Below are positions 26,301 to 55,565 of a DNA stretch of 64,000 bases, piece by piece. The position numbers and the translations under genes were made by a program. The stretch is from the NCBI GenBank assembly GCA_026770705.1, contig JANJGN010000036.1:682001-746000 (forward strand), read 5' to 3'. This DNA is from Isurus oxyrinchus (Eukaryota). A model generated the notes under the pieces. The model was not told the DNA's origin. It saw nothing but the letters and a program-made list of their open reading frames with translations, and ran no database searches. The stretch's first letter is position 1, and each line of letters begins with the position of its first letter.

Positions 26301-26991
26301 ACATACGCACACATGTTAACACACACACATTGAAACACACACACACGACCACAAACTCACAAATATCTTTATATGTGTCTATTGTTATCTGTTGTCCCCG
26401 GAAGTGCTTAAATGAGAGGCAGATTCTTAGAATCTAGTGAATTCCTGCAACTGATCTTATGAAGTAAAGACCTTCACTGAACAGATCACCAACTCATCTG
26501 TGCCTGTCTCTGTTCTTTGGTCCTTAAACCAATATTTGTTTGGAGACCCCAGATGAACGATACAAGTAGAGGGGCCGCCCGTTCTCTGGGTTGCAATCGG
26601 CACCATGGCGTGACTTCTGATGCTGTAGGAACCGTCCGCCTCCCTCGTACCGGGATTCTGTAAGTAGAGAGATTATAGTTACATTATCACTGGTTATTGA
26701 AGGATAGCAAGCAGCCGCCTTGAAAGACGTAGTGAGTAATTTAAGAACAGTCACATCATTATTTTTAATTATTCTTATCCCTCATTTGATTTTCTTCAGC
26801 TTATAAGAGAGACAAATAAACAAACTCATACGATCAGGTCAAATCCCTTCACCTGGTCACTGGGTAACATTTTTAGCTTAGTTAACAATGATTCTGGCGG
26901 ATCCCAGTTTACAATTCTCACCCGCCTCTTACTCACCACAAACCCGTAGCACTTGGAAAACAAGTGGCAGAGACAAAAATACCTTGGACAT
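23373..26991 (-). pseudogene. Type B receptor pseudogene with V and half of C deleted
   Basis: Intact leader MSKVFLSLPLVFQVLRVC at 26991-26937. The V acceptor (26657) is fused out of frame to the 3' half of C (DPGTREADGSYSIRSH..STCIVHLGSP). TM relic ~24826-24724 with a stop and a dead acceptor. Cytoplasmic exons 24624-24594, 23716-23661 and ~23422-23373. Confidence 0.82.
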
Positions 26992-29099
26992 CTTGACGTG
27001 GTGACTTCACTCTGTTTTCTCTCTCACCACTTTGTTACCTCAGGAGAAGTGGCCCCAGACTGACCTGAGCTCAGTCCCAGTCAGTAGCTCCACATTCAGA
27101 TCTGGTGAAAACCTGACTAGCTATGCTATTGAAAGTACTACAATATTTTGGGTGGGTGAGGCGTCCTGATGAGTACTGTGGTCACCATCTGAACATCACA
27201 GCGGTCAATTGGTAGAATGCCACTCAAGTTGTCGCCCGGGGGTGGGGGGTGGTGGAGGTGGTGGGGCCTGGGTCACAGAGTACTAATTGTATGGATGGGT
27301 TCTGAATATTGCAGTTAAGGATTACTCAATTCTGGGCACGTGAGAGCCGTTTGCAAGGGAAGCATGTATTAACCATCCCTGGTTGACTCTTGAGGTGGTG
27401 GTGGTGAGTCGGCATCTTGAACTGTTGCAGTCCATGTGGTGTAGGTACAACCACAGTGCTGTTAGTCGGGTAGTTACAGGATTTTGACCCAATGAAAGTG
27501 TAGGAATTGCGGTTCTTTTCATGCCAGGATGGTGTGTGGCTTGGCGGGCAACTTGCACTTGGTGGTATTATTGCTATCATTGTACCAGAAGTTTGTAGAG
27601 GTCGCAGATTTGGAAGGTGAACGCCAGGAATTCAGAGTGTTATGTCATTGTACTCAATATAATCAATTTTGTAAACAGTTTGTACAAAATTCATGATAAA
27701 ACCTGGTTATGTCAGAGACTGGAATATATTGGGTAAAATGTATGTGGATTAGTTTGAATTTACGAGTGTCTCATTCTCTATATTACAAATTACACAAAGA
27801 TCTGGAGTGGGATTCTAATGTAGCAAAGACGGGCCTTCACCACACTTATTGTGAATCTAAATGGATTGAGTACAGTTCCAATCCTTTCGTGCATCATCCT
27901 CCTTTCTGTCAAGTCTCATTGAGTAGGGTTTCGACTGACTTATTCTATAATATAAAATGCCGTTGGTGATTGACCTGAATTCAGTGTCCTGAGTTCATTG
28001 TATTTGCCTATGATTCATTGATTGACCCCGTGAAGAGAGTTTCAAACAATCATACATGTTCCACTTTGCTTTGTGGTCTAAGCGGGTTCACAGCAGATCA
28101 ATGGAAAATTAACTGCACATTTAATTTTCCATTGAACTTTGAAATAGCCGTTAAGCTCCTTTGATGTTACAGTTTATAGAGTTACATAGAGTTTGAAGCA
28201 CAGAAACAGGCTATTCGACCCGACTGCTCATGCTCGTGTTTATGCCCTGCATGACCCTCCTCCCATCCCTTCTTCTCAGTCCAACAGCATATCCTTACAT
28301 TCCCTTCTTCTGCATGTGTTTACAAACTTCCCACTTAAATGCAAATCTGCAAGAGCCTCATCCATTCCCTGTGGGAGTGGGTTCAACATCCTCCCCAATG
28401 CCCGAGTAAAAAAGTTTCTCCTGAATCCCAGACTGGATTTGACGAATATTAATGGCTCCACATTATAGAGGATCATAGGAACACAGGATTGGGCCATTGG
28501 ACCTTTTGAGCCTGCTACACTATTCAATAAGGTCATGGCGGATCTGGTAGTGGTCTCGACTCCACCTTCCTGTCTGCCGCCCATAGGCCTTGGCTTCCTT
28601 GACGAACAAATATCTGTCTAACACGGGGCCTTGAATACATTCAAAGACTCAGCCGGCACTACATTCCACAGACCAACTACCCATTGAGTGAAAAGAAAAT
28701 CTCGTCATCTTTGTCTTAAAATGGAGACCTTTATTTTTGAATTCTCCACGATTCTGGATTGAATTTATTGAAGGCCAATATTGTTGAAAGCGTGCAGAAG
28801 TAGAATCATCTTCCTTCAGCCTGCCAAAATAAACCATTTCACAATTTTAAAGGCCCCGACCAGGTCAACCCTGAATCTTCTCCTTTTTTCGATCAAAGAA
28901 CTCCAGCTTGTTCATTCATTCCAGCTTGTTCATTCATTCCAGATAGATATAAGCTCTCAGTTCCTTTATCATCCTTGTGAAACATTAACCGTACCTTTTC
29001 CAGTGCCTCTGTATCATGTCGAGAACATGCAGAGTTCTGTCCTGTACTCCAGCTATGGTCTAACTAACGTGAGAACATACCTGGTGTATTTTGTAAAGC

Positions 29100-29185
29100 T
29101 GATGATGAGTGCGTGACAGCACTTGGACCTGTAATAAACAGGAAAACCGCAGAGAGCTATCTACCTCGGCACCGTTTTTCAACCC
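29100..29185 (+). promoter_or_regulatory. Gene A proximal promoter (FOX-ETS-RUNX composite)
   Basis: TAAACAGGAAAACCGCA at 29135-29151, about 160 bp upstream of the ATG. The AAACAGGAAA core is shared with three other A-type copies. Confidence 0.5.
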
Positions 29186-29307
29186 CTATCGTGTATCTAT
29201 GCATAAACATAGAATGGCATTCAGGCTGCATATTTCACACATCCTTCAGACCGAAAGGAGAACGAGTTCTTGGGGGCTCACAGACTGACCGTCTGAAGTC
29301 ACGGGCA

Positions 29308-32300
29308 ATGAGCTTCCTCGCTGTGTGTGCATTGTCCCATCTCTTCCAGGGTGAGATATCTTAACATGTTACATACAGTGGAGAACGGCAGGGATGGTGT
29401 AAATAAAAAGAAATTGTTTCAATTGGCAGGGGGCGCGGCAACCAGCGGGACACAGATTGAAGAGAACCGGCAAAAGGACCAGAGGGGGTGGGGGAGTGGG
29501 GACGAGAATAATTTTTCTTTAACCAAGAATTATTGTGATCTGGAAGGCTCTGCCTGAAAGGACGATAGAAGCACATTCAAAAGGAATTTTCAAAAGGGAA
29601 ATTGGATGGATACTTGAAAGGGAAACATTTTCAGAGATATGCAGGACGGAGCGGGGGAGGTGTTGGGGGTGGGGGTGGGGCGGTTGGTGGGGGGGCTACA
29701 GAATGGGGGATAGCTGGATAGATCTCTCCACGTGCCAGCATTCTGAAGGGCCAAAATGGCCTCCAAATGCGCTGTGCGGGACTATGAGATGCAAGTCAGT
29801 TATCAGGTTCAATATAAAAATAGAGCGAATATAATCAACAATATGGGAACTGCATCCGTCAGGAACAATGAATGAAATTAATCTGAAATGTAAACTCCCC
29901 TGAGATAAAAGATGTGAGTTGGCCCCATCTTCATTATTGGCGATTCAGAAGTGGACAGAGTTTCAGGTGGATCATTAGAGTGAGTATTGATCTCTGGAAC
30001 AAAATAAAATGCCCAAAGCTAACGGAGAAGAACAGAAAACGAAGGGAGGTGAGAGAAGAAATATAACAGTTTGAAAATTTAGATTTGAAGCAGTTCTTTT
30101 AAGTTTTGGAAAGACAGGAATAGAACGGCGCAAACAACCGATTGCGCGTGATTTATCGATATGAACTATATATTTTTTTAATGACCGTGCCTCCTCCCTA
30201 TCGGGGTGTATTCGTCGGAGGCTAGCTTCGGGAGAGAGGGTGTGCGGGTGCGGGGTGGCGGATTGCACTGTAATCTGAGGTAACTTGTTTATTTCTGTCT
30301 TGCTCAGTTATTATGTCTCAACCCGTCTTGTCTCAGTCTCCACCGGTTCAGACACTCCCTGCAGGGAGTCGTGCTAAATTGAGTTGCCTCACGGAGGGCT
30401 CAGTGGTTAGCTTCATCCTCTGGTACAGACAATCGGAGCGAAACGACATGAAGCTGATTTACATAGCGGGCCAGTACCTCCCCGCAGAGGGGAGGTTTTC
30501 CAGTGAGGCTAATTGCAAAGCGGTTAATTGTTCACTGCTCATTGCGGACACCCGGAGAGATGATTCTGGAATATATTACTGTGCAATCCGCAATTTCAAT
30601 AACATGGTCAGAATATTCGGAAATGGCTCCCAGTTAGTGATTACAGGTGAATTTTATCATTATTCCATCGAATTAGGTATTTTGACAGCAATTAAAAGTC
30701 TCTGGTTTCAGCTCATAATGATGTTTTTCCTTCATTTGCCAAATTTAGAGGGCCCCCCCACCATATCCCTCCTCGCCCCGCCAGAGGATGAGATTCCCTC
30801 CATGGAAAGGGTCCCGTTGTTATGTTTGATAAGAGGCTTGTCCCCCGATTCCTTAACAGTCCACTGGGATATTTCCGCGCGGGATGCGGATAGACAGACC
30901 GATTCCGGGACAATTGAGTCGGACGGGACCTACACCATCAGGAGTTACACCAGCCTCTCGGCGGAAACATGGAGCAGCGGCGCTCTCTGTACTTGCGCCG
31001 TTCAAATCAACTCCAGTGAAAATCTTCTCAGTGCAAGTGTCTCATCTCAGAGAGGTAGCTATTAACAGTGACCGTTTACCAATCTATTTAATGCTGATGG
31101 GAGACTTTGTCAACTTTGTAAATTAGAATTGTCCATCTTTCCGTGTGTGTCCATGTAACATCATTTTATCATTGACCTATCACAGGTCTCTCCGTCTTTC
31201 AGAGTTTAGCTTTCTGAAATTCTAACTCCTTCCGTTCTCTCTACCTCAGAGGGCTACGGATGCTCTGTCGCTGAGGTAGATTTTTGTGCATTAAGTGAAT
31301 AAGGGACGTGGACAGGCCAGGAAATTGCATTTAATCTGCAGGATTAACAGTGGTCTTATTGAATGGCGGATCTCCTTGAGGGGCAGAATGGTCTCCTGCT
31401 CCTATTTCCTGTGTTCTTGTGTCTATCTAAGCATATTGACATGGTTCCATGCCACTGGATCATTTGTCAGTGAGCAAAATTGAAAAGTGTGATTACATTC
31501 CCAGTGCACCACTTTGTCTCACCATGCCTGTGTAAAATTATCTATTCATATCTCTAACTACTTAACATTCACAATATTTCTGTCTGTCTTAGTTAAATAT
31601 TGGGATGTAAAATATCTTCTCTATCCGTGTGTCTATCTGTTTATCTATCTATTCATCTTTCTTGCTCTCTATCAAACATCCATTCTTATCCTCGTACAGG
31701 TTAAGATAACTGCTTTATCTATTTTTATGTTTAACTCTCTCTCTCTCTCTGAAACCTTCTCACTACCGCTCCCCCTCTCTGAATCTCCAGGTCCCACCAC
31801 TGTTTGCCTCATCACTCTCTCCCTCTTATTCTGTCATTATCTATTGATAAATGTATTCATCTCTCTATCTATATCACTCTACCTCTGTTTATCTTGTCTA
31901 TTTCTATAGTAGTTAAATGGTGCCTTATAAGAAATCTGGGACATTCATCTATCTTCCCATCTGTCGATCTCTCTCCATCTCTCACCCTCTTTCTCTCTTT
32001 CTCTCTCTGTCTCTATCGCTCTCTCTCTCTATCCCTTCCCATCCATTTAAAAAATTCTGTCTATGTTTTATGCTCTGTCATACTCTCTTCATCTCTCTAT
32101 CTGTAACTATCCAGCTCTCCATCCATTTCTCTATCCAGCTCTCCGTCCATCTCTCTGCTCTGCTTCTCCCCCTCTCCAAATCTCTCTCACTCCGTCGCCC
32201 CATCTCCCATTTCTTCCTTTCTCCCCCTCTCTCTCCATCCCTCCCCTCCCTCTTTCCCTCTCTCCCCATCTCTCCCTTACCCCAATTCCCCCTCTGTCGA

Positions 32301-34140
32301 ACTCTCCCTCTCTCCCCTATCCCCCATCCCTTCCCCCCTTTCCATTTTCCCTCTCTCTCTCGCTCCCTCTGTGACCATCTCTCCCTCTCCACCTCTCTCC
32401 CCAACTCTCCTCCGCTCTCCCATCTCCTTTCTCCCTCTCACTCCCCCATTTCTCCCTATCTCCACATATCTCCTCTCTCCGTCGCTACCCCTCTCCCCTG
32501 TTTCCCCTTATCTTCAAACCTCCCTCCCCCTTCAACTATTTCCCTTTGTATTTCTATCTTAGTTAAACAGAGAGTGATCTTCTCTCTCGACCACTCTCTG
32601 TCCATTTCTCCCCGGCTTAACATTTATTTGCTATTAAAACAGTGCTCTATCTATCTCTTTCGTTATCTCTCTATGTTTGTCCTATTTAAATAGTGTTCCA
32701 TAAGATCGCTGCTCTCTCTCTCTCTCTCGCTTTCTCTCTCTATATTTCAGCCTTTATAAATGGGCGTCTATCTATCTCTTTATCACTCGCTCCCAGTGTC
32801 CGATTCAAATAGCGTTTTTAACGATCTCTTCTCATTCTCCCTATCTCTCTCTCTTTCTGTATACAGATATCTACCCTGTTCAAATAGTGCTTTATAAGAT
32901 CTCTGCTGTCCCTTGCCACTCGTCTCTCCATCTCTGTCTCTATCTCTTCTCTCTCATTCTACATATTTCTACTTCTGTCCTGTTTTAATATTCTTCTGTT
33001 ACGTCTCTTTATTTCCGGATAATGAAAGCAGTAAAAATCTATTTCCGTCTGCAGGTGAAATCAGGCATCTAATTTGCGACCTTTTCCCCCACTTGTTTAT
33101 TTAATTCCACAAACTTTCTTTTAAATGAAAGTTTTTTTTGCAGATTCTCCGCTCCCGACAACCTGCAGTTTCCTGTTTTCAGGGAGTTTGACGGCGGCAG
33201 CTCTTCTCCTTCTGGGGATGATTCTTGTGGTCGGGAGAAGGAGCTGCCGGAACCAGCAGACAGGTAGCGATTTTTGGGAGACGCTGAAACTCCGTGGCGC
33301 TCTCAATCAATTCAGTTATGAATAAATTATTGACAGTTTCAGCCGGTTCAGAGTGAAATGTAGCCACTTACGCTCAGTTCAAATTTTACTTTCTAACAGG
33401 AAAAATGAACAGTGGTGAGGAAATGAAAGATTGCAGAGAACAACGAGAGAATAAAGAGGTAAAAGAATGCAATTGTTGCCACAAGCCTGGAAACATTTCA
33501 CGAAATTTTAATCCAAGGTTCACATTTCATAGTTATTGCGATTAATCTAAAGAAATTTAGGTCATGAGTAATACAGGATGGCAGAAACTAGGCTTCAATT
33601 CCTCTCATTAGGAAGATTAAGGGTTGATTTAATCCAAGGGTTTAAGATGATAAAAGGATACGATCGTGTCTGAAGAGATAGACTCTTTGCTCTGGTGGCA
33701 CAGATGTGGAGTTGCGGTGCGGGATGAGTAGTGGGGGTTGGAGGGCTGGAGTCCAGAACAAGGGGGCACGACCTTAAAATTAGCGGTAGATCATTCGGGG
33801 GTGATGTCAGGAAGCACTTAGTCACACAAAGGCGAGTGGAAATCTAAAGCTCTCTCCCCTCAAAAGCTGTTGAGGCTGCGGGATCAATTGGAAGTGTCAA
33901 AACATGGATTGACAGATTTTTGTTTGGGAAAGGGGGTTAAGGATTATTGAACCAAGTTGGGTGGATGGACATGATGATACAGACCAGCCAAGCTCTAATT
34001 AAATAGATTGGAGGGGCTGAATGGCCTCCTGCTATCCCAATGATGATGGTTTTCGTTATATTAATGGATTCGGTTTTTATTTTTTTTCTCCACAGACGCT
34101 TTATGCCCGCTTGGCCTTCAATGAAGATGCCAAACTTTGA
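29308..34140 (+). CDS. Type A non-rearranging VJ-C1-TM receptor (TCR/IgL-like IgSF), intact, 6 coding exons, 303 aa
   Basis: Exons 29308-29350 (leader MSFLAVCALSHLFQ, donor gtgaga), 30308-30646 (V with fused J: LSC..WYRQ..DSGIYYC..FGNGSQLVIT), 30749-31054 (C1: LLCLIRG..HW..DGTYTIRS..W..CTC), 33144-33263 (DSPLPTTC + hydrophobic TM + RRSCR), 33400-33458 and 34096-34140 (TLYARLAFNEDAKL*). All introns are GT-AG with compatible phases (1,1,1,1,0). The total is 912 nt with no internal stop. Confidence 0.88.
30308..30646 (+). CDS. Type A VJ exon (V-set Ig domain with germline-joined J motif)
   Basis: Canonical Cys, WYRQ, DSGIYYC and FGNGSQLVIT lie in one exon. No heptamer/nonamer between YYC and FGxG. 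Confidence 0.93.
30749..31054 (+). CDS. Type A C1-set constant domain exon
   Basis: PTISLLAPP, LLCLIRGLSP, VHW, DGTYTIRSY, TWSSGALCTC. Flanked by tttag| and |gtagct. Confidence 0.92.
31700..32960. repeat. CT-rich low-complexity tract in the gene A C-TM intron
   Basis: Polypyrimidine, (CT)n-rich sequence. Confidence 0.9.
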
Positions 34141-34749
34141 CTGGAGAGCAAAGAGGGAGAGAGAGCTCGCACTCTTCTTCCCGAACACGACGTGCTGCAG
34201 ACATTTTCTACTGTTAGGCGGGAAGTTCCGAAAGTCCAAACGGTGCAAATTCAGACGTATTCTCGCGCAATTTTATGATGTCGCCCAAAGCGGCAACAGA
34301 ATAATCCCATAATGCCCGCTATTCTAACCATAAAATATCGCCTGCAGTTCCACTCCAGCCTCTCCTGCTTTCTGTTATTTGGCACTGGTGTTTATGAATG
34401 CACTCTGCGTCTTTATTCAGTATATCAGCAACATATTATTCAAACAGGCTTTACAATGTATCTGTGCTCGAGTAACCCTCATATTAAAATAGATTTGAAA
34501 ACCAATGTTTGCTCTGTGATATCAGTTCTCTAGATCATTCAGACCAGATGCACCCAGAGTATCTCTGTGGCCAATGTACAAATACATTTACAGAGAGAAT
34601 GTTAGCAGGATAGAAGCAGGGTTAAGGACCAACAAGTACTGAATGGGGTTTAGGCTGCAGTGCTAGTGGACCCCGAGCCTTCACTGGTTGTGTCCTGGGA
34701 GGGAACATTGTTATATTTACTCTTGTTGACAACCCATCCACCCTTTTGT

Positions 34750-36130: not shown

Positions 36131-36369
36131 CAGTTTAGTGCATTTTACGGACCAACATCACTGGTTCAAAGGCACGTAAAATACAGGAGGAGGCCATTTG
36201 GCCCGTCATGCCTATGTCAGCTTTTTGAATGTGCACTTTAGTATCACACCCCTGCTGTCTCCACATGATCCTATGAATTAGTCCCTTGTAACACACCGCC
36301 CATTAACTGTTAGTCTTTATCCTGAATACAGCACATCCCATTGGCTGTGATTGAAAGTGGCTTGCTGGT

Positions 36370-36890: not shown

Positions 36891-37235
36891 TCCTACAGGC
36901 ACGTTAGAGCCATTCAGTCCCTTTGGTTGGATCTAGCATTCTATCTGTTCATGTCTGAAGTTAGGAAATTTAGGTAGTTTAAGTACGTTCTATGCGTCTT
37001 TGTTTTTTTAAGGTATAAGGTACATTTTTAAGTTTAAGTTTAAGTTATAAATTTTTTCTATTTGTCGATTAAAATGTGAATCCTGGGATCTAGTTGCATT
37101 TTTGAATGGAGGTAGCAGGTCTAAGGCTTTGTTTTTATATTTGCGTTTCCAATGTATTTTGTGACTCTTCAAGAGAAGGTAAAACAATCGCAAGAGTAGA
37201 ACAAACGGTGCAGCTACCTAGCAACAGGCGTCCAG

Positions 37236-37467
37236 NNNNNNNNNNNNNNNNNNNNNNNNNNNNNNNNNNNNNNNNNNNNNNNNNNNNNNNNNNNNNNNNN
37301 NNNNNNNNNNNNNNNNNNNNNNNNNNNNNNNNNNNNNNNNNNNNNNNNNNNNNNNNNNNNNNNNNNNNNNNNNNNNNNNNNNNNNNNNNNNNNNNNNNNN
37401 NNNNNNNNNNNNNNNNNNNNNNNNNNNNNNNNNNNNNNNNNNNNNNNNNNNNNNNNNNNNNNNNNNN
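37236..37467. other. Assembly gap
   Basis: N run. Confidence 1.
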
Positions 37468-40490: not shown

Positions 40491-40627
40491 GCTATTTTTA
40501 AACGTTGTACCAAATTAAAGCAAAATGTGCATTTTCATCACATCTTCTGAGTCCGTGGCCGAGAGCAGAGGGAACTGAGCGACGAGACGGTCCAAATCTC
40601 ATAGGAACCGGCCCGGGATCGGAAACC

Positions 40628-43600
40628 ATGTGCTTCTTAATGTACTGTGCGTTGCTGCGTCTGTTTCTGGGTTTGAGCCTTCTTCACTCCTCATTCAGGA
40701 TGGTTTAAGATATATTCAGCTAAGTGGAAAATAATCCCCATGTCTACATTCTATAATATTACCTTCATGTTGAAGGACTGAATTATGCCCACCTGATCAA
40801 AATTGATCACATATCAACATTCTGCAAACTATCTGATAAGACGTTCAAAAGAGATTCTATCTGCGTCTTTCAGTTGCAAAGGATCCCAGGGCTACGATTA
40901 GCAGAGGAACGAAGGGGTTGGGGGACGGGGGTGTGGAGTTCTCCCCGTTGTCCCTGGGGACAATATTTATCCCCCAGCTGCGTCATTAAAAGCACGACCT
41001 GGGTCATAGTCACTTGTTCCTTGTGGATCTTGCTGTGCGCCATTACGGCTGCCACGTTTGCAACGTCACAACAGAGACTGCATCTTGAAAAGAAGTCCTT
41101 CATTGTCTCTGATGCGCCTCTTCTTCCCTCTTGCTCGTGTTATTGTATTGGAGCGTTGGACTCCATTAACATGCTTTAACCAGTTGGTGGTCTATTTACG
41201 TTTTACTGTTGTAGCCGATTCTCCTGAGCGAACATTTTCTCCCTCCCTGCCACAGCAGAATCCATAGACTTGATTATGTATCTCTCATTTATTGTATCTC
41301 AGGCAGTTTTGTCCCAGATTCCAGAGGTTCAGAGTCTCTCGCTTGCAAGTAAAACAAGCTGCATTGTGACACGGCTTAATTGGCGGTGGTGGGGAGGGAG
41401 AGGTGGACTGGTATAAACCGAACCAGCGGAAGCTTGTTTACACCGTGACAGAATAAAAATCTGCAACCGGGTGATATCCAGGAGAAGTTTACGAGAATCC
41501 ACTCTGTATTCCCTGAATATTGCGGGTGTGGAGGCCAGTGATTCTGGCATGTATTATTGTGCAGCTAAGAAGTTCAGTAGGATGCCCTTTACGTTTGGAA
41601 ATGCTTCAAAATTGTTTATCACTGGTCCAAATCACGATTTTCCTACAATTCCATTATCAATGATCAGGAAATTATGGCCAATAGGTATCGAATCTCAAAG
41701 CGCGATCCCATCACATTGTCCAATAATCGACCATGGAACTCCGCCTCCACCTGAAATTCTCTCGATGGGAGGGGAACTTTCGGTGTCTTTGGGGAAGTGT
41801 CTGGACCCCGATTCCTTTGCCACCCACTTGGAAAGTTTCTGGAGGGGGTGCCCAGGGACAGAGCGATTCCAGGATAATCGAGCCGGACGGGACCTACCCC
41901 ATCGGGAGTAACATAATCCTCTGGGCGTAAACTTGGAGCAGCAGTGACCTCTGTCCTTGCGCGGCTCAATTAAATGCCAGTGAAAATCTTCCAAGTGAAA
42001 GTGTCCCATCTCAGGGAGTTAACTGTTAACAGTTTGCTCGTGCATTTAATGTGCGGCCTATTATTTTGTCATATCTCTTTGTACATCTGAACTTCCCCCT
42101 TCAATGTGTTCACATATCATTTTCAGACACCTTACCAGGTTCTCCTGCATCTCAGAATTTCAGTGTTTACCTTTCTGAATTCTTAATCCATCTGTCTAGT
42201 TGGGATAAAATCCCAATTTTCTGTTTACCACTTTCCCTGTTTTTCCTCTGTGACATTATCTGTATCCCATAGGGCAAAGCTTCCAGCACCTAGACAGTGC
42301 ATTCTGCCCTTTGGCTCGGGGCTGGTGTTTCTACTCCAGATGAACCTCATCCCACCCCTCTTTACTTCAGCCCATCACCATGTCCTTCTGCTGGTTTCTC
42401 CCTCATGTGTTTATACAGGGTCAAATATCAATCCATATCTGCAATTCACCTCAACCGCTGCCTTTGGGAACGTGCTCCACATTCTGTCTGCTTCCTGATT
42501 AACGCGTTTCCTCCTAAATTCTCGATTCGATTTATTAGTGACTGTTTGATATTGATGGTTTCTAGTTCTGGTCTCCCTCAGAAAGTGCCAATACGTTATC
42601 TACTCCTGCCCTAAAGTCATTTTCATCATCTTAAAGATATTGATCAGGTTACCCGACAGACTCCTCTTCTCTCGAAAAAAAGATGACAGCCTGTTCAAAC
42701 TTTCCTGATTGTCAAAACCTTTCATTTCTGGTAACATTCCAGTACACCCCGCCTTTTTGCTCTGTCCCCTGTGCCTGCATATTCTTTTTATGATATGCAG
42801 CCCAGGATAATTCGCAGCACTCCATGTGCGGTCTAGTTAAGTTCTGATACACTTTAATGCTGCCTTTCTTCTTTTCATTGCTGGGCCAGGCTGTTATCAT
42901 CTTATTAACCTCTGATTTTTGTGTTGTCCCTCAGAATCCTCTGCTTTTCTGTTCTATTCAATCGGTTATTTTCCACTGATTGCATAGCCCAAACGTTGTC
43001 ACTAGGTCTAACCCGGTTCCCAACCATTCTTCTTCCTAGCTAAACGGTCACTATATAACGTTTCATCCAAGACAAAGGAATGAAATCCGCTGGATGACCA
43101 TAAGCTGGTTAGTCTTTCATGTGTGGAGAACAAACGCTTAGAGTTAATTGCTATACATGAAATTGATGAGCATTTCATAAAAGATGGGTTCGTTAAGGGC
43201 ATTCAGCACCGACTTGTTAAAGTGTAGCTTAACACATTTAATAGAGATTGCCCTATCAAGAATTATCCGAGTGGACAGTTAAATAGAATGCAGTTCATGG
43301 GGTTCCACGAGGTCTTCACGTGTTTGTGCTTTATAAATTTATCTATGTATCCCTCACTCGCACCGGGTCNNNNNNNNNNNNNNNNNNNNNNNNNNNNNNN
43401 NNNNNNNNNNNNNNNNNNNNNNNNNNNNNNNNNNNNNNNNNNNNNNNNNNNNNNNNNNNNNNNNNNNNNNNNNNNNNNNNNNNNNNNNNNNNNNNNNNNN
43501 NNNNNNNNNNNNNNNNNNNNNNNNNNNNNNNNNNNNNNNNNNNNNNNNNNNNNNNNNNNNNNNNNNNNNNNNNNNNNNNNNNNNNNNNNNNNNNNNNNNN

Positions 43601-44659
43601 NNNNNNNNNNNNNNNNNNNNNNNNNNNNNNNNNNNNNNNNNNNNNNNNNNNNNNNNNNNNNNNNNNNNNCTATCATTCTCTCACACGCTGCCTATGTGAC
43701 TGTCTCCCTCTATCTAGCCATCCATATAGCTTCAAATTTGTAAATTTTCTTCACTTGCCTAATAAGTATCGATTTTTAAAAAAAATGTGCTTGATGAAGT
43801 TGGGGACAGTGTCAATACTGACATTGTTTGCCCTTCCCGAGCCGCCATGCTTAGGTGGTGCTGGATCTCCTTGAACGTTATGCAAGAGCCAAACGGCTCG
43901 GGTTGCAGTATTTTTCTGAAATACAATGAGATTCTTCAATTCTTGCTCCCTACCACTTGCAGTTTCCATTTTCAGGGATTTCGTCCAAACGGGGTTCTCC
44001 TTCAGGGGATGGTTCTTGTGCCCGGGAGAAGGGGTTTCTGGAGCCGGCAGTCAGGGAGAGATTATAGGGAGAAGCTGTAACTCCACGGCGCTCTCAATGC
44101 ATCCATTAATCACTGGGTTTTGGCAGTTTCAGCTGTTTGAATGTGAACTGAAGTCATTTCAACTAAGTTTAAATTTCAGTATCTAGCAGCATGAACAATG
44201 ATGCGGAACTGACACATTATAGAGCAACAACACAAGAAAATGCGGTTACTATGGATGAATTGTTTCCTAACATGTGCAGATACATTTAACCTAAGGTTAA
44301 AATTCATAGTTAATGACATATGAGTCTAGGAGATTTTGCATAGTGCATATTGCAGGAGAACACTGTTTACACGTGATACAACATTGTGAAGATAGATAAG
44401 AAATATAGATAGGTGTTCAACTGAATATGTCAAAATTGAGATTGATAAGTTTTTGTTGGGTAAAGGGCCTTTACTGTTATGTAACGAAGGAGGGGAGAAG
44501 GGGTTAATTTACATATCAGAAAATACATTATTGAAAGGCAGAACATGCTCGACGGGCTGAATGGACTCCTGATAATGATAAGCTCACGATAACCGTTTGT
44601 GTTTCCTCTTACAAACTATTTTTGCTCAGTTGGCATTTAATGCGGATCCCACAGTCTGA
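40628..44659 (+). pseudogene. Type A VJ-C1 receptor pseudogene (all exons recognisable)
   Basis: Leader MCFLMYCALLRLFL at 40628-40670. V relic ~41290-41625 (DSGMYYCAAKKFSRMPFTFGNASKLFIT) with a lost acceptor, frameshifts and stops. C relic ~41740-42020 (EPDGTYPI..WA*). TM relic ~43940-44055, cytoplasmic relic ~44188-44245, last exon TIFAQLAFNADPTV* ~44615-44659. Confidence 0.85.
43370..43669. other. Assembly gap
   Basis: N run. Confidence 1.
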
Positions 44660-48425: not shown

Positions 48426-51400
48426 TCATCTGCCGTCCCCCTTCTTTTTTGACCTTTTCTCCAATGCAGCCAAGTCCAGTGAAGCGTAGAGAGGTCCACT
48501 TTGAGTCTGGGAGATATTTTAAACATCAACAGCTAAAAGTAGCTTAAATATAGGTAAGATTGCCCTCTCCCGCAACTGTGTTTCATAGAATCATTGACTG
48601 ACACAGCACAGAAGGAAGTAATTCCACCCATTGTGTCTGTGTATGAAAGAGCTACGCAATTAGTCCCATTGTACCCTCCTCTGTCCCCATATCGCTGTCA
48701 TTATTTTCACCTTCCACAATTTTGTAATTCCTTTTTGAAAGTTGCTACTGAATCGGATCCCACTGCACTTTATCCCAATTTGAGGAAAGTTTTGCTCCAT
48801 TTATATGTACAAGAATCATCTGAATTGATGTTTTCTAATAGAGCTGCAGAATTCGCAAAGAGACTAGAAATAACCAAAGTTTAATCAGAAAACTGGGGTG
48901 ATGAATCTACCAATTTGATTGAATTCCTTTGTTGTTAATTGGCCAACCCGATGACTGTGTTTCACCATGTGCCACCTGCACAATTGAGTAGAGTCCACTA
49001 AACTGATGACATTTAGAAGAATGACACAAACACGATCAAAAGGCTAGTGTTTATATAGCGCCTTTCACGAACTGAAGAAGCCACAGCATATTTAGATCCA
49101 CTCCTTTGAAGTATAGGCTCTGTTCTTCATGCAACGTGGCAGTGAATTTACGCACAGTAAGATCCCATACACAGCAATGAATTAATGACCTAGATAATTT
49201 ATTTTTAAGGTGCAGGTTGAGAGATAAATTATGAAACGGGAAAATAGAGAGAACCCCCAACTCACCGCAGCCCCCATCCCCCAACACCCCACCACTGCTC
49301 ATCTTGCAATAATGGTGGTACCAACTTTGACGCCAACCAGAGAGGTCTAACAGGTCCTCGGCTTAACAATTCATTTGAGTTCGGCACCTCGGACAGTGCA
49401 GCACTCGCTCTGGAGGTTCAGTTTAGACATTCTGCCCAAGTGTCTGGACACACACACACGCACATACACACACACACACACACTTGCACATAAACATGCA
49501 CACACACACACACACACACATGTACACACGCATATACAAACACATGTAAACACAGATGCACGCACATGGTCTTTCGCCCCAATCTGACCCCTTCGCAGTC
49601 CACTTACAACAGAAGCAGATTTAGATTTATCTATAAAAACTTGCATACGTTTGGTCTGACCTTCATTCTAATTCCATTTGCTAATGTGTTTACTAAATTG
49701 GTTGGGTCGGAGGAGGGGCAAAGTTGTTAAACGAGGGAAGGGGATTAGACTCACTGTAGAGATAAAAGAAAATAGCACAAATCTAAAATATGAACTGCTG
49801 GCAATACGCTGTTAAATCTGACGGAGACATTCCACCTGGAAAATGGCCCTATCCTTTCTGTTGTCAGATGGGGAATATTTTCTGATTCCAGTTCGAGGGA
49901 CGAGTGGGATTATATACAAATTCAGATGCTCTAGACTATGACCTGCCCTGTGATAAACGCGTGGAATAACTAGCATGGGAAGCCCTGCACCTTATCCCAA
50001 AAACCTTTTTGTATGTTATTACAATAATTTCTAAACAACTCACCTGTACTGCATCCCGATGTGTCCGCTTTCCATCTCTTTGACGGCGGTCATCTGTGTT
50101 ATTAATGGTTGAGATAGCAATTCAAATGTTATCCCAGTCTGGCTCATTCATAATGATTACAGATACGTCATTCGCCAATGATACGCCAATGCACCAATGG
50201 CTCCAGTAAGCCCATTTGTGACGAGGCCCCCAGTCCATAGAATGTCTCCCAACACTAGAAAGTTCCCACAAAACTTCACTGGAGTGAAAATCGCCAATAG
50301 ATGGACAAGCACTCTCCATCCACAGTGTGTGGCGTCTATTCTCCTTCTGGTATACTACTGCAACTATTGATAACCAGGAAGTGGCATTTTTTATGGGAAC
50401 CAGAGTCAGCAGAGTGATTGAAAACATTATTGATGGTGGGAAATGTTTTTATGTATATATCCAATTCCAAGGACTTGACATTTAATCTGTGCCAAAATTT
50501 CAATGCAACTTACCCGTTTGTCGCTCATTCTTCCCCTCTCTTTGCCTTCTCTCTCTCAAGCTGACCCTGGATGCGAACAGAATTATCAAACACGTGTTAT
50601 ATTTTATGAATACTGATGGAGCTGCCAGAAATAGGTGAGAAGAGAATGTCGAGTGGTCTTAGAATCTATCTTAAATGTTCATGGTAAGTGGCAGCATATA
50701 TCATTGGAATCAATGTTGTGGTTGAACTGAGCTAGGTCCAGTGTTAAATATGAAGCGTGGGTTCGGGATGAAGTTTTCAAATGGTTCAGTTACTCACGTT
50801 TCATTGTGGGACCTCTTGCTTGGTTCTCCTGAAAGCAGAAAGTAAATTATCAATTTAAAAGTAGGAGAAGGGAATCATTTGAGACAATCAATTATTAAAA
50901 TATCACTGATAAATATTAATCCTCACCTGATCTGCTGCTTTTATGAATCCAAATGGAAATAAAGACCAAGAGTAGAACCAATATCACCAGGACAGTTATG
51001 ATAACAGGAAGGGCCAGCATGCACCATCCTACAGAGACAAAACACTTAGAAACTGCCACTCCATCAAATCAACCTTTTCTGGTACTCTCTGATGGGAAAC
51101 GTGCTCCAAAATTAAGCCCAGAAGCAGTCCATTTGGATCATCGTGCCAGTGCAGGCTTTTTGACAGCGGTAACTAATTAATCATATTCTCCCTGCCCTAT
51201 CCCCCATACTATTGAAAGTGTCTTTCCATCAGGTATTTATCGAAGACTTTCATGATTTTGAACGCCTCGATTAAGTCTCCCCCTCAACCCATTCTGCTCT
51301 ATAGAGAACATTACCAGATTCTACAGTCTCTCCACATTTACTGAAGTTCCTCATCCCTGGTCCCATTCTGGTAAATCTTCTGTACCCTGCCCAAAGCATT

Positions 51401-52958
51401 CTTGCCTGTTTTCTGCTTATAAAGTGCATCAAGTGTGGAACTGACCTCAATTTAATTCCAACATCCACTGCCTAATCAGGGGGGCGGATGTAGATTCAAC
51501 ATTAACTTTCGGAAGAGTAATCAGATTCTAACTTGAAGAGGAAAATGTGGAAGTGTTGTGGGGAAAGGGGGATCCAATGGGATAACGCTTACAAAGAGAT
51601 AGCACAGGCACGATGGGCCGAAATCGCTCTTTCCGCATCTATCGTTCTAGAATTCGACGATGTCTTGGAGAAATATAAGCCAAGTCCAGAAATTGTTTAC
51701 AAGGGCACGTCTACACCTGAGGCTAAGGCAACCCTAACTTATTTTTTAAATCATATTTAGAATATACATATTTATAGTTTGCTTTACAGCTGCAGGTTCC
51801 AACAATAAATTAATTTCTCCAATTGACTCTAAAGTTGCGTAAAAGCCTCCATTGAGCAGATCGCCTACTCACCTCCCCCTGACTCTGCTGCTTTCGAGAA
51901 CGGCAAACTCTTTGTCCAATATTTGCCTGGAGACCCCAGTTGAACAACACAAGTACAGACACCGCCGCTTCTCCAGGTTTCCCTCGATACTATGACGTGA
52001 CTTCTGACACTGTAAGTCCCATCCGCCTCCTTCATACCGGGATCGCTAGGCCCCTCAGTGACCAGGTCGGAAATATTCCAGAAAATAACAACCTGGTTGG
52101 AAGAAACTCCACTGACCAAACACACTAAGGGGACGGTTTCCCTCAAATGCAGCTCACCCGGCGGGACAAACACCAGCACAGCCGTCTTGTTGGTGGAACT
52201 GTCTGGACAGAGATTGGGACTCAGTTAACGATGCATTAGCCCCAAATGATAATGCATGATCTGAATTAATTTCACTTGCTCTCTTACCTCCAACCAGTAG
52301 TGTTGATCCATTGTGGAGCGGAGCATTGCTACTCCTATGAGAACTGTAATAAGAACCCCAGTCATTTTTCTGGACATTGCGAATTTCCAGAATCAATTGA
52401 TGTTTGTTTTTGCCTTCTTTGGAAATAAACTTACAATTGCCCCACTGACAGGAGTGAGTGTCTATTAGTATCGGGGCTTCACCCACACGTTGTTTGTACC
52501 AGAAATAGAGAGACACCGATTTCACTTCGTAAAAGTAGTGCGAGGTTAATTCCACCGTCTTTCCGACTTCAGCTGTCATTATGAAGGGGCCCGGAGCCAG
52601 AGAGAGCTCGGATTCTGTAACAAGATAGATTATTGTTACATCACTATCGCTTATTGGGAGATTTTAAGCAGCCGCTATGAAAGACTTCGCCTGTAATATT
52701 AAAATAGTCACATCATTGCCTGTAATTATAGGTGTTTAGATTAATTTTGCAATTTGAATCCTTCGCTTTCTCGGAGGAACGACTAAATAAAAACACAGGA
52801 TCAGGTCAAATCGCTGCACCTGGCCACTAGGTCATATTTTCTGCTTAGTAAACACTGATTCTGGCTGATTTCACTTTAAAATTCTCACTCTCCTCTTACT
52901 CACCATAAAGCCGCAGCATTTGAAAAATGAATATCAGAGATAAAGATCCCTTCGACAT
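48426..52958 (-). CDS. Type B non-rearranging VJ-C1-TM receptor, intact ORF, 8 coding exons, 342 aa
   Basis: Exons (minus strand): 52958-52904 (leader MSKGSLSLIFIFQMLRLY, gtgagt), 52614-52288 (V, WYKQ, ending NGSTLLVG, gtaaga), 52202-51873 (C1: LVCLVSG..FW..DGTYSVRS..W..CTC), 51028-50927 (GWC + TM MLALPVIITVLVILVLLLVFISIWI), 50828-50798, 50566-50514, 50093-50044 and 48506-48426 (TQSGPLYASLDLAALEKRSKKKGDGR*). All introns are GT-AG with compatible phases. The total is 1029 nt. The distal cytoplasmic exons are less certain than L/V/C/TM. Confidence 0.82.
51873..52202 (-). CDS. Type B C1-set constant domain exon
   Basis: ORF 51865..52179: VPLVCLVSG..IFWNIS..DGTYSVRSH..TWRSGGVCTCVVQ. Acceptor gtccag, donor gtgagt. 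Confidence 0.92.
52288..52614 (-). CDS. Type B VJ exon (atypical V domain with Cys->Ser at both canonical positions)
   Basis: VELTSHY..FWYKQRVGEAP..LEIRNVQKNDWGSYYSS..HNGSTLLVG. Acceptor ttacag, donor gtaaga. Confidence 0.88.
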
Positions 52959-52959
52959 C

Positions 52960-53210
52960 TTGATGCGATGAGTTCACCCTGTTTACACACTCAGCAGTTT
53001 GTTTGTGCAGGCGGAGTGGCCTCTCACTGACCTGAACTCAGTCCCAGTCAGTTGCTCCCCTTTCAGATGCGGTGGAAAGTATGACGAGTTATGGTATGGA
53101 AAGTATGACACCATTTTGGATGCGGTGTCGTGGCGAATGTCACATGCGTTTGACTTACTGTGATCACTGACTGTGCGTCACAGTGGTCAAGTGGCAGCAT
53201 GTCTTTCAAG
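52960..53210 (-). promoter_or_regulatory. Conserved type B promoter block
   Basis: Blocks ctgacctgaRctcagtcccagtcagt, tcagat.tggtg/cggtg, gaaagta..aca and cacagYggtcaa are shared with 27000-27235 and 63470-63680. Confidence 0.55.
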
Positions 53211-54829
53211 ATAATAATTGTATAGGTGTACGCTCAATATTGTAGTTAAAGTTTAATTGAATTTAACCACCCCCAATTGTCATTGAGAAGGTGGCGGTGA
53301 CCCAGTTTTAATAACCTCCGTCAAATCGCTCTTCAGTCTTGTCCTGAGAGAAAAGAGACTTGGCCTAATCAGTTATTCCTGTTAGCTATAATCTTTCAGC
53401 TCTGGCAGTAACCTTGTACATTTGTCTTCCACCTTGTCTTCCACCGCGTGCAGTGCATTGCTTTTATAAAATTGAGTCCAGGAATGTGCACATTTTGTCC
53501 AAGTGTGACCTGAATAAGTTTCTATAGACGAACATGTCTTCTTTGTTTTTCACTTATGTTCCTCTGCAAATAAGCCCCGTGCTGATTTGCATTTTTCCTG
53601 TTAAGATCACAGGCAATTGCGTCAAAGAGAACTTCCAATATAATGACTCACAGGGCGAATGAACCATTCGTTTGATCCGCGTCAGAAACAGCCCAGAACC
53701 TGAGGGCAAGATAAAAGCAAAATTCTGCGGATGTTGAAATCTGAAATAAAACCAAAAAGTGCTGGCAAATCTCAGCAGGAAGACTGTGAAGAAGAGCCTT
53801 AAGGACTCGAAACGTTAAATCTGTTTCTGTTTTAGACTTGCTGAGTTTTCTCAGCATTTTCTATTTTGAGTTCAGAAACTGAGGCCTCTGTTTCCAGGGT
53901 TTGTATTTAGATCCTGAACGGGGATCACACTCCCGCATTCTGCTGATGAGTGAGCGGCTTCACTATAAATAACCCGGGTAGAACCGGCTCACGTAACCCA
54001 GTGGCTATAACAGTGGACACGATTTTTAAAAAGAGCAGGTTTTCCGAAAAAGCCGTGTTAGGGTTTAAAGGAAACTAATTCTCAGAGGGAAATCAGCACG
54101 AGCCGGACACAGAGAATCTCCGGGAAGCTGTAATGAGAAAATTCTTTACGTTAGCGAAACCGAGGGGCAGTGGGTGTAAGGTTCATAAAAATCTGATATA
54201 AATAGAAATTTACTTTATGTTTTGCTGAAGGCAAGAGTCCGCTAATTTATTTGAACCCGCTCATGAGATTTGTGGGTCGCGGGCTAGAACAGTGTTTATT
54301 GCCCATCCCTAATTGCCCCTTGAGAAGGTGGTGAGCGGCTTTCTTGGAAAGCTGCAGTCCCTGTGGTACAGATACACCCACAGTTCTCAGGGAGGGAGTT
54401 CCAGGATTTTCACCTAGAGACAGTGAAGGAACGGCGATAAAGCTCTGAGTCAGGCTACTGTTTGTCTTGTGGGGTAATTGGAGTTGGTAGTGCTTAGATG
54501 CCCCCTCTGCACTTGTCTTTCTAGTCGGTGTCAGCCTTGGCGATTGGTTGCAATGCTGCATGTGGATAGATAGTGCAAATTGAATTCTCTCTGAGCCTCT
54601 GATGAAGCAAATGCATGATTTGTGAGTCATGTTGGGGATCAGTTATTTTTTTTTAATACGAGCATCGCAGATAAACAGTGACCCGGTGTCAGGTCAGTGA
54701 GGACACTGTAAATGAGGTGAATGTACACCAGCCTGTTCTCTGTTCAGCTGAATCTACCCTGGACGACAAAGCCTCTTCTATCTGCGCATTGACCTTGAGT
54801 CAAATGCAGGCGGTTCTGTAAATGAAGTG

Positions 54830-55565
54830 TCTCAAATGTAAAAACAGGAAAATCACCGAGAGCTTCTGGATCGAACATCGTTTTCCATCTCAAGCGAAAA
54901 GCGGCCAGAAACTCGGCCAGCGGTTTACGCCAATCGATGTACTTTTCACAGCCTCGGAATGGATTGTGAGACTGTAAACAGCCGCGGTCACAGCCAATGC
55001 GCCTCTTTGCTGTCCAGCCCCGCTCTCTGCTGCAAGGTCCACTGACTCTCTTCTTTGCTATTCAAGATCAAGCATTTTCGCAGAACAGTTTAGACATTCA
55101 GTAAGGAGCAACGCTCATTCCAGAACCCATTCTAAAAGTTATTCATTCTACCAGTTTAGTTACATTAAGATGAAAGTTTATCCCTCCTCACACAGTCAGC
55201 ATTCTATTGAAAATTCCTTGGCATGGGTTCCTGTGAAGTCTTGGAGAGAATTTGCAGCACAGATTTCCTTCTTTTACTTTATAAATGGCTCGAGCTTGCC
55301 ATGAGGGAGTCCCATAAAATAATCATTTGACCCAGCAGTATTTATTAAGTAATTTGTCTTCGTTGGCGTGGTGCATTTTGACCCTTTACAACAACTGTCA
55401 CCATTATCCAGGGTCTACTCTTCATCCTCATTCGTATTTGGATTCACTAAAGTGGCTGATCTGGTAAGTATTAATGTTTAACAGGGCCTGATTAATAAAC
55501 GTTTGTTAATATGCTCGCTTTTAAATACTAATTTCAGCTTCTTTTTTCAGAAAACCGAATGAATA
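54830..55565 (+). pseudogene. Relic: type A promoter/leader followed by a type B-like TM exon, both on the + strand
   Basis: aaaacaggaaaatcaccgagagct resembles the gene A promoter. gtcacagccaATGCGCCTCTTTGCTGTC at 54997 resembles the A leader. 55350-55565 aligns by eye with the B TM exon, its intron and the next acceptor (tggtgcatt..tctactctt..atttggattcactaaagtggctgatctg|gtaagt). Confidence 0.55.

What the first reader, a model, noticed from the sequence alone, without database searches (positions are those of the whole stretch)
26937..55040. Head-to-head B<-->A cassettes with reciprocal pseudogenisation
Seen: the B-pseudogene ATG at 26991 (-) faces the intact A ATG at 29308 (+), 2.3 kb apart. 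The intact B ATG at 52958 (-) faces an A-type promoter/leader relic at 54997 (+), 2.0 kb apart. One cassette kept A and lost B, the other kept B and lost A, so this window retains exactly one working copy of each. Inference: the divergent pair is the ancestral unit, with shared regulation and 1:1 stoichiometry. A third B start at 63466 predicts an A-type start about 2 kb further on, just beyond the window end.
Basis: partly seen in the sequence, partly recalled or inferred. Interest (0 to 1): 0.78.

Follow-up and report, generated by a model that had tools for sequence, protein, structure and literature searches.

The report
Back-to-back shark receptor gene pairs
This shark DNA carries repeated back-to-back pairs of two old, antibody-like receptor gene types, most copies now dead, and the pattern of which partner died looks like ordinary gene turnover, not proof that the two proteins work as a matched pair.

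Summary
The places are real. B-psi1 (ATG 26991, -) is dead: a 570-bp deletion removed its V exon and half its C exon. A1 (ATG 29308, +) has six open exons (303 codons) and a 90%-identical basking-shark counterpart. B2 (ATG 52958, -) has eight open, phase-consistent exons (342 codons) but lacks both canonical V-domain cysteines, which 43 of 44 homologues keep. The 54997 relic is truly A-type: the stretch just upstream matches the 5' read-through of a Cetorhinus A-type model (E 3.5e-31). No A-type V or C exon follows it. A broken B-type TM fragment follows instead, on the + strand.

A and B are old sister lineages of non-rearranging VJ-C1-TM receptors with a tyrosine motif in the tail. The B|A pair is a duplicated unit: three landmarks lie in the same order in both spacers.

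"Reciprocal" loss is not beyond chance (1 in 2 for two cassettes). Only 2 of 10 gene copies or relics are open, and four A-type copies have no B partner. No RNA run was found, and the two promoter blocks sit 2 kb apart and are unlike each other. So shared regulation and 1:1 stoichiometry are not shown. The gaps lie outside both open genes. The scan had already noted this cluster in neighbouring windows.

The parts
3556..5255 (+). A'-type pseudogene (A'3psi): V-like exon with stops at 4286-4534. Colinear with 40057-42811.
   Evidence: blastn blocks; tblastn
19228..19270 (+). A-type leader relic (MSFLSVFASFPLFQ). It is followed at 19633-20892 by sequence like the 3' flank of A1, and there are no V or C exons between.
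   Evidence: (z 19.1)
23372..26991 (-). B-psi1. Leader 26941-26991, deletion junction near 26656, 3' part of the C exon 26523-26657, TM 24725-24820, cy1 24596-24622, cy3-like exon near 23372-23420 with its acceptor lost.
26992..29307 (.). Divergent spacer 1. B-proximal block 26992-27158, SINE-like repeat 27361-27566 (-), A-proximal block about 29130-29307.
29308..34140 (+). A1, open. Leader 29308-29350; VJ exon 30308-30646 (FGNGSQLVIT); C1 exon 30749-31054; stalk with Cys plus TM 33144-33263; cytoplasmic exon 33400-33458; last exon 34096-34140 (TLYARL).
37236..37467 (.). Assembly gap 1, between the 3' flank of A1 and the A'2psi copy. It is not in any exon and was not filled.
   Evidence: flanks colinear with 4-468 and 1258-1431
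40628..44647 (+). A'-type pseudogene (A'2psi). Leader 40628, V 41291-41623 with stop and indels, C 41720-42014 with stop, TM 43946-44053, last exon 44615-44647 with Tyr changed to Phe. Gap 2 (43370-43669) lies in its C-TM intron.
48426..52958 (-). B2, open. Leader 52904-52958; V exon 52288-52614 (Ser at both canonical Cys places; LHNGSTLLVG); C1 51873-52202; Cys plus TM 50927-51028; cy1 50798-50828; cy2 50514-50566; cy3 50044-50093; last exon 48426-48506 (PLYASL).
52959..54996 (.). Divergent spacer 2. B-proximal block 52959-53200. Stretch 53081-53167 (+) is like the first exon of Cetorhinus A-type model P0003. Inserted repeats about 53250-54280. SINE-like repeat 54283-54494 (-). A-type 5' region 54717-54996.
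   Evidence: (very high word depth over the repeats)
54997..55036 (+). A-type leader relic (MRLFAVQPRSLLQ, GT donor kept). No A-type V or C exon lies downstream of it.
55280..55690 (+). Degenerate B-type TM + intron + cy1 fragment in the A orientation. The acceptor is lost and there is a stop in the TM.
   Evidence: Contigs of three runs of a second organism label bridge 54958/55014/55028 to 55322.
62615..63466 (-). B3psi. Leader with a 1-bp deletion and lost donor. V 62814-63127 with a 1-bp deletion, 2 stops and a GC donor. Only the 5' third of the C exon remains, followed by simple repeats and gap 3 (61884-62050).

Best explanation
The window is a stretch of a multigene cluster of non-rearranging receptor genes shaped like antigen-receptor chains. 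Each gene has a split leader, a single-exon VJ domain, one C1 domain, a stalk cysteine, a transmembrane segment, and a tail ending in an xLYAxL tyrosine motif.

There are two old sister lineages. A, with a sub-lineage A', lies on the + strand. B lies on the - strand. An ancient inverted duplication placed B and A head-to-head.

The unit [<-B | A-> (A'->)] was then copied in tandem. The copies decay by deletions, frameshifts and repeat insertions, which is birth-and-death evolution. That one cassette kept A and the other kept B is a by-product of this turnover and is not evidence for dosage balance.

Shown: the gene structures, the lesions, the colinear spacers, the age of the lineages and their linkage in other species.

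Inferred: the proteins are surface receptors that signal through the tail tyrosine, probably in an inhibitory way. Their stalk cysteines allow disulfide-linked dimers. Whether these are A:B, A:A or B:B dimers is open.
For: Domains: V-set plus C1-set by Pfam.

Exon models read sum to 303 codons (A1) and 342 codons (B2), as in annotated orthologues.

Lesions: a 570-bp deletion in B-psi1; five lesions in B3psi; stops and indels in A'2psi and A'3psi.

Colinear spacers: the B-proximal block occurs exactly 3 times, each next to a B leader. The SINE-like repeat is in the same orientation in all three. The A-proximal box appears in A1 and the relic only (2 matches, 0 expected; the pattern was derived from these two places).

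Larger paralogy: 4-5255 matches 36434-42811, and 19633-20892 matches 34344-36882.

Tree: A + A' + batoid A-like group together (SH-aLRT 97), against B of sharks, batoids and chimaera plus tetrapod relatives (87).

The exception is Chiloscyllium.

Cetorhinus models P0001 and P0003 carry read-through of the A 5' region and of the B-proximal block read away from B.

The copies are 65-80% alike, so they are old duplicates and not assembly doublets.
Against: It is weak for the chromosome-sized contigs of three batoids and Mustelus.

The + strand B fragment after the relic is not explained. A simple inversion model predicts further exons that are not there.

The signalling role of the tail motif is inferred. 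The A1 motif (TLYARL) and the B2 motif (PLYASL) do not fit the strict ITIM consensus as I recall it, although some homologues do (VIYASL, SVYARL, SIYTSL).

No expression data were found.
Confidence: 0.72

Rival explanations
1. The divergent B|A pair is a functional unit with a shared bidirectional promoter, and it makes equal amounts of two chains that form a TCR-like, disulfide-linked A:B heterodimer. Selection keeps one working A and one working B, hence the reciprocal loss.
For: The head-to-head layout is repeated 2-3 times with colinear spacers. Both chains have a cysteine just before the TM: A1 'PTTC', B2 'GGGWC'. They are whole-length paralogues with the same tail motif. Both lineages are old and linked. 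The first exon of Cetorhinus model P0003 lies, by homology, 123-209 bp from the B2 ATG on the opposite strand. That would fit divergent transcription if the model rests on RNA.
Against: The reciprocal pattern has a 1 in 2 chance for two cassettes.

The spacers are 2.0-2.3 kb long and full of repeats. One bin has a word depth above a million.

The A- and B-proximal blocks show no similarity: 10 of 12 pairs have z below 2, and the two at about 3 both involve the repeat-rich 19228 relic.

The A' copies and the 19228 relic have no B partner.

B2 lacks both V cysteines.

Several distinct contigs per run lie on the B V exon at 85% likeness (5-6 in X1, 2-12 across the four runs). So other B copies exist in the genome, and the count in one window says little.

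No RNA run was found. Pairing of the chains was not testable.
Confidence: 0.2
2. B2 is not a working gene at all, only a young pseudogene that has not yet picked up a stop. In that case the window holds one working A and no working B.
For: Both canonical V cysteines are Ser in B2. By contrast, 43 of 44 homologues that cover both places have Cys at both, and even the dead B3psi keeps them. The J-like strand reads LHNG and lacks the first Gly of FGxG, although all B-type proteins lack that Gly. No close orthologue was found: best identity is 70% in V and 77% in C1.
Against: All eight exons are open with intact splice sites and phases. B2 departs from otherwise invariant shark positions at only 3 of 24 places in V and 1 of 21 in C1, within the range of annotated genes (0-6). 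Losing both cysteines together, not just one, could also be a compensated change.
Confidence: 0.35
3. The repeated cassettes are an assembly artefact, caused by mis-joins at the three N gaps or by duplicated haplotypes.
For: There are three gaps in 64 kb. The best DNA run holds only 0.75 of the sampled words.
Against: Paralogous copies are only 65-80% identical and carry different lesions. Both sides of gaps 1 and 2 are colinear with paralogous segments at plausible spacing. The junction between the relic and the B fragment is bridged by contigs of three runs of a second organism label, with 6 differences each over 295-365 letters.
Confidence: 0.03

Closest known systems
UrIg and UrIg2, the non-rearranging shark antigen-receptor-like genes (PMC12227049; I read the abstract, sections 4 and 7, and passages)
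   Same: Split leader. A single-exon VJ domain followed by C1-type domains. Germline-encoded. Found in elasmobranchs. Auto-annotated as Ig chains. UrIg2 also has a TM.
   Different: UrIg has three C1 domains and is secreted. UrIg2 has nine to eleven. A and B have one C1, a stalk cysteine, a TM and a tyrosine-motif tail. They come as two lineages in multigene clusters. The paper's text does not mention them: 0 hits for ITIM or Mem5, and its single 'head-to-head' hit refers to a crystal dimer.
TCR and Ig light chains
   Same: A V-C1 chain of about 300 residues. Orthologues match Fab heavy- and light-chain V+C1 stretches contiguously, with E down to 1e-37 for A and 1e-23 for B. A has a canonical FGxG J motif. 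Both have a membrane-proximal cysteine, as TCR chains do.
   Different: V and J are already joined in one germline exon and conserved between species, so there is no rearrangement. There is no charged residue in the TM of A1 or B2. The chains carry their own tyrosine motif and would not signal through CD3 or CD79.
SIRP and other paired or inhibitory IgSF receptor clusters (KIR, LILR, NITR). Their features are recalled, not taken from a call.
   Same: A V domain plus C1-set domain(s), a TM and a tyrosine-motif tail. Multigene clusters with many pseudogenes, evolving by birth and death. SIRP clusters are among the nearest named ESM Atlas neighbours of a B orthologue, ranks 6-7 with scores 0.95-0.96 (leads only).
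   Different: SIRP has V-C1-C1. The A and B V domains are VJ-type and score best against Ig chains. Two sister lineages are arranged head-to-head.
[quoted passage not shown] 2019, J Immunol). I saw only its citation in PMC10751288. The paper is not held.
   Same: By its title and the citing text, it is a pair of non-rearranging VJ genes regarded as antigen-receptor relics. The B clade here has tetrapod relatives (turtle, lizard, caecilian) with V, C1, a Cys before the TM and an I/V-x-Y-x-x-L-D-F tail. These may be that family.
   Different: Not testable here. The domain make-up, linkage and orientation of PRARP could not be read.

Membership tests
Non-rearranging VJ-C1 antigen-receptor-like genes (the kind that includes UrIg and UrIg2) | VJ domain encoded by one germline exon, with a split leader | tested here: met
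   In A1, the V exon 30308-30646 carries YYCA...FGNGSQLVIT in one exon, and the leader is split at 29350/30308. In B2, the V exon 52288-52614 ends in LHNGSTLLVG.
Non-rearranging VJ-C1 antigen-receptor-like genes (the kind that includes UrIg and UrIg2) | C1-set constant domain after the V domain | tested here: met
   Pfam C1-set: E 1.3e-09 for A1 and 1.2e-09 for B2, both above the curated cut-off.
UrIg / UrIg2 proper | Three (UrIg) or nine to eleven (UrIg2) C1 domains (PMC12227049, sections 4 and 7) | tested here: not met
   There is one C1 exon per gene, followed directly by the stalk/TM exon. Orthologous proteins of 300-343 aa have one C1.
Rearranging TCR/Ig chain genes | Separate V and J segments that are joined somatically | tested here: not met
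   V and J are contiguous in the germline exon. The same joined sequence is conserved in orthologues of other species.
Rearranging TCR/Ig chain genes | Charged TM residues for assembly with CD3 (a TCR feature, recalled) | tested here: not met
   A1 TM is FLFSGSLTAAALLLLGMILVVG. B2 TM is MLALPVIITVLVILVLLLVFISIWI. Neither holds K, R, D or E.
ITIM-bearing inhibitory IgSF receptors | Cytoplasmic (I/V/L/S)xYxx(L/V/I) motif (consensus recalled) | tested here: inconclusive
   A1 has TLYARL and B2 has PLYASL, so position -2 is T or P. Homologues have VIYASL (P0021), SVYARL (P0011) and SIYTSL (P0027). Phosphatase recruitment is not testable here.
Bidirectional-promoter gene pair | Divergent transcription starts less than about 1 kb apart (definition recalled) | tested here: inconclusive
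   The ATGs are 2317 and 2039 bp apart, and the transcription starts are unknown. The conserved proximal blocks lie within about 200 bp (B) and about 280 bp (A) of their ATGs, with repeats between them.
Bidirectional-promoter gene pair | Co-expression of the two genes | not testable with these tools
   No RNA run holds the stretch.
Disulfide-linked heterodimeric receptor (TCR-like) | Physical pairing of the two chains | not testable with these tools
   Only the stalk cysteines were seen. No complex prediction or experiment was available.
PRARP (chicken) | Any defining feature of the family | not tested
   The paper is not held. Only a citation was seen. Searches for the name found nothing further.

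The most novel reading that the evidence does not exclude
A and B are the two chains of a germline-encoded, disulfide-linked, TCR-shaped heterodimer. They are transcribed divergently from one control region. This is a surviving non-rearranging counterpart of the two-chain antigen receptor that existed before the RAG transposon split a VJ exon. Its B chain still has relatives in tetrapods.
Probability: 0.15. Interest if true: 0.85.

Novelty: new member of a known kind. Interest (0 to 1): 0.45.

Why it matters
Genes with an intact single-exon VJ domain joined to a C1 domain are sought as relics of the antigen-receptor precursor (PMC12227049, introduction).

Here two sister lineages of such genes sit head-to-head and linked. 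Both lineages are found in sharks and rays, and B also in chimaera. Each has one C1 domain, a stalk cysteine and its own signalling tail.

If the two chains pair, this would be a living model of a pre-RAG two-chain receptor. If they do not, it is one more immune-receptor family that evolves by birth and death.

This window adds three things:
- exact lesions of the dead copies;
- a complete 8-exon model for B;
- evidence that the divergent pair, and not the single gene, is what was duplicated.

It also shows that the 'reciprocal loss' argument carries no weight.

Tried and rejected
I used contig lengths, gene-id neighbours and read-through parts of gene models as weaker proxies.

2. Expression. 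No RNA holder was found. The one read-laying run gave only short contigs, at 85% likeness mixed with paralogues. It showed the relic-to-B-fragment junction in a second organism label, but it could not settle the B2 cysteine codons.

3. Mirror-image duplicate of B2. The + strand TM fragment lies within 30 bp of the mirror position about 53190. Apart from the TM block itself, only simple-repeat matches were found between B2 (48400-53200) and 53201-61883. Rejected.

4. Inversion model linking the + strand B fragment to the truncated B3psi. It predicts more B exons on + and A exons on - in 55.7-61.9 kb. None were found (all z below 1). Not supported.

5. Common origin of the A- and B-proximal promoter blocks: no similarity.

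6. GPCR-like open frames at 12913-13771 and other frames: no Pfam hit.

7. A published name for the family. Searches found only the UrIg papers and one citation of PRARP. The supplements of PMC12227049 and PMC10751288 were not seen and may list such genes.

8. Errors of mine. In one search my B2 V coordinates were off by two, corrected. In one search the cy2 and cy3 pieces were out of phase, and those two translations are not used.

9. One search did not count the first cysteine column as invariant because P0089 has Tyr there.

Full report
GAPS FIRST. The window has three N runs: 37236-37467, 43370-43669 and 61884-62050.

Gap 1 lies between the 3' flank of A1 and the next A'-type copy. Its left side (36434-36882) and right side (38011-38188, 39619-40028) are colinear, on the same strand, with 4-468, 1258-1431 and 1467-1886 at the window's start.

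Gap 2 lies in the C-to-TM intron of a pseudogene. Left of it, 41806-42033 matches the A1 C exon (30843-31069). Right of it, 43945-44231 matches the A1 TM region (33151-33444). The spacing is 1912 bp against 2082 bp in A1.

So order and strand are kept across both gaps. Neither gap touches an exon of the two open genes, and frame across them is not an issue. I did not fill them or look their letters up.

WHAT THE GENES ARE. Open frames at 30274-31062 (+) and at 52157-52663 and 51868-52224 (-) carry Pfam V-set and C1-set domains.

From the sequence, A1 has six exons:
- leader 29308-29350
- VJ exon 30308-30646, with the canonical Cys, WYRQ, YYCA and FGNGSQLVIT in one exon
- C1 exon 30749-31054
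- stalk with a cysteine, plus TM, 33144-33263
- cytoplasmic exon 33400-33458
- last exon 34096-34140 (TLYARLAFNEDAKL)

Phases agree and the sum is 303 codons. That is exactly the length of annotated shark proteins with the same layout. The C exon is 90% identical to the second half of Cetorhinus model P0112, which also shares A1's extra cysteine pair and its tail.

B2 has eight exons:
- leader 52904-52958
- V 52288-52614
- C1 51873-52202
- Cys plus TM 50927-51028
- cy1 50798-50828
- cy2 50514-50566
- cy3 50044-50093
- last exon 48426-48506 (PLYASLDLAALEKR...)

The two middle tail exons were found by comparison with orthologue tails. They resolve the phase conflict between cy1 and the last exon. 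The sum is 342 codons, against 340-343 in orthologues. I built no joined protein. Every search used single exons or natural open frames.

THE DEAD COPIES.

B-psi1 keeps its leader (ATG 26991). A clean 570-bp deletion fuses the V-exon acceptor to the middle of the C exon and shifts the frame. The C donor and the cy3 acceptor are also lost.

B3psi (ATG 63466) has five lesions: a 1-bp deletion in the leader, a lost leader donor, a 1-bp deletion and two stops in V, and a GC in place of GT at the V donor. After the first third of its C exon there are only simple repeats and gap 3.

On the + strand there are also:
- two pseudogenes of a sub-lineage I call A' (40628-44647 and 3556-5255), related to FGNASKL/FGNGSKL-type proteins of other sharks
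- an A1-like leader relic at 19228, followed directly by sequence like the 3' flank of A1

THE RELIC AT 54997. The leader peptide (MRLFAVQPRSLLQ, donor GT kept) is too weak for tblastn, but the region is A-type beyond doubt.
- The upstream 300 nt aligns to that of A1 with score 40 against 18.3+-2.4 in shuffles (z 9.1; 0 of 300 shuffles reach it). The aligned blocks lie at matching distances from the ATG.
- Residues 1-62 of Cetorhinus A-type model P0001 are a read-through of its 5' region. They match 54717-54902 at 84% identity, E 3.5e-31.

No A-type V, C, TM or tail exon follows within the window. Instead, 55280-55690 on the + strand is a degenerate copy of the B-type TM exon, intron and cy1 exon. 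It is 65.6% identical to B2 over 401 bp, its acceptor is lost and it has a stop in the TM.

So the relic is a chimera of an A promoter and leader with a piece of B 3' end. Contigs from three runs of a second organism label bridge the leader relic into this fragment, with 6 differences each over 295-365 letters. It is therefore not an assembly slip. Its origin is unexplained: neither a mirror duplication nor a simple inversion leaves the traces it should.

IS THE DIVERGENT PAIR THE UNIT? Both spacers show the same order. Next to the B leader is a B-proximal block, which occurs exactly three times in the window. Then comes a very high-copy SINE-like repeat in the same orientation. Next to the A leader is the A-proximal block. 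Spacer 2 has about 1 kb of extra repeats. This colinearity means the duplication carried both promoters together.

Larger blocks suggest the copied segment was [<-B | A-> flank A'->]. These blocks are 4-5255 matching 36434-42811, and 19633-20892 matching 34344-36882.

Cetorhinus model P0003 is an A-type protein. Its first exon is homologous to 53081-53167 (+), which lies 123-209 bp from the B2 ATG and is read away from B (E 4e-10). Weaker matches sit at the same relative place beside B-psi1 and B3psi. That is indirect evidence for the same layout in basking shark.

Linkage is general. Chiloscyllium is the exception. Four of the eleven contigs are chromosome-sized, which makes those cases weak. 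In Hypanus a B-type gene and an A-like gene carry consecutive gene numbers, which is suggestive only.

A tree of 38 rows separates A + A' + batoid A-like (SH-aLRT 97) from B of sharks, batoids and chimaera plus three tetrapod relatives (87). The split is therefore older than sharks versus rays.

WHAT IS NOT SUPPORTED.
- With two cassettes that each lost one partner, the reciprocal pattern is a coin toss.
- I count 10 copies or relics in the window: six A-type places (including A', the 19228 relic and the 54997 relic) and four B-type places (including the + strand fragment). Only A1 and B2 are open.
- Four A-type copies have no B leader within 2-2.5 kb upstream.
- Several distinct contigs per run lie on the B2 V exon at 85% likeness (5-6 in X1, 2-12 across the four runs), so the genome holds more B copies elsewhere.
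- The two ATGs are 2.0-2.3 kb apart.
- The A- and B-proximal blocks are unlike each other.
- No RNA run was found.

IS B2 WORKING? It is the only B-type V domain with neither canonical cysteine. Of 46 homologues examined, 44 cover both places. Of these, 43 have Cys at both and one has Tyr/Cys.

Yet B2 departs from otherwise invariant shark positions at only 3 of 24 places in V and 1 of 21 in C1, within the range of annotated genes.

At the third base of the first Ser codon, every laid contig of all four runs differs from the window. These contigs may be paralogues. I leave B2 as open but atypical.

KNOWN RELATIVES. The closest literature is UrIg/UrIg2 (PMC12227049), which have multiple C1 domains. 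A and B share the single-exon VJ and the split leader but fail the multi-C1 feature.

Orthologues match antibody Fab chains over V+C1. No structure of the family itself turned up among the best 60 PDB hits.

Tetrapod relatives of B, from turtle, lizard and caecilian, have the same layout and a similar tail. They may be the chicken PRARP family, but that paper is not held.

The scan had already noted this cluster in neighbouring windows. I used those notes as leads only.

Noticed in passing
window 18181-18409 (+): An orphan C1-like exon relic (VLLPPSWEEMDSGSATVSCLVCGF...) lies 0.8 kb upstream of the 19228 A-leader relic. Pfam C1-set is only weak (E 0.044), and tblastn to the A1 C exon gives E 0.009.
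   Followed up: partly
window 55280-55690 (+): A B-type TM + cy1 fragment lies in the opposite orientation to all other B copies, directly after the A leader relic. Its origin is unexplained.
   Followed up: yes
window 4-5255 and 36434-42811: A large colinear paralogy covers the A 3' flank, LINE pieces and an A' pseudogene. It suggests the copied segment was longer than one gene pair.
   Followed up: partly
window 31055-31063: Read-through of the A1 C exon ends ...SQRGSY then a stop. Cetorhinus model P0001 ends the same way (...SQGGSY). A short secreted form by intron retention is possible, or it is only a habit of the gene predictor.
   Followed up: no
window 52541: At the third base of the Ser codon that replaces the first V cysteine of B2, all laid contigs of four runs read A and none reads the window's C. 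These may be paralogues, or the codon may differ between individuals.
   Followed up: no
window 54283-54494, 27361-27566, 63802-63995, 14001-14202, 60122-60323: A very high-copy SINE-like repeat, with summed word depth above one million. The three copies upstream of B leaders share one orientation.
   Followed up: partly
window 2508-3038, 34730-35950, 38174-40030 (+), 45867-46654 (-): Reverse-transcriptase fragments of LINE-like elements fill the space between receptor genes. RVT_1 was confirmed by Pfam only for 2508-3038; the others I read from translations.
   Followed up: partly
window 30505-30528: The A1 V domain has an extra cysteine pair (NCKAVNC) shared with its Cetorhinus counterpart P0112 (SCKAGNC) but not with other A-type proteins. 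B-type V domains have a different conserved CxxxxC pair.
   Followed up: no
window 58657-58888 and 59824-60055: An inverted repeat with 232-nt arms, 81% complementary and 935 nt apart, lies between the relic and B3psi. It was not identified.
   Followed up: no
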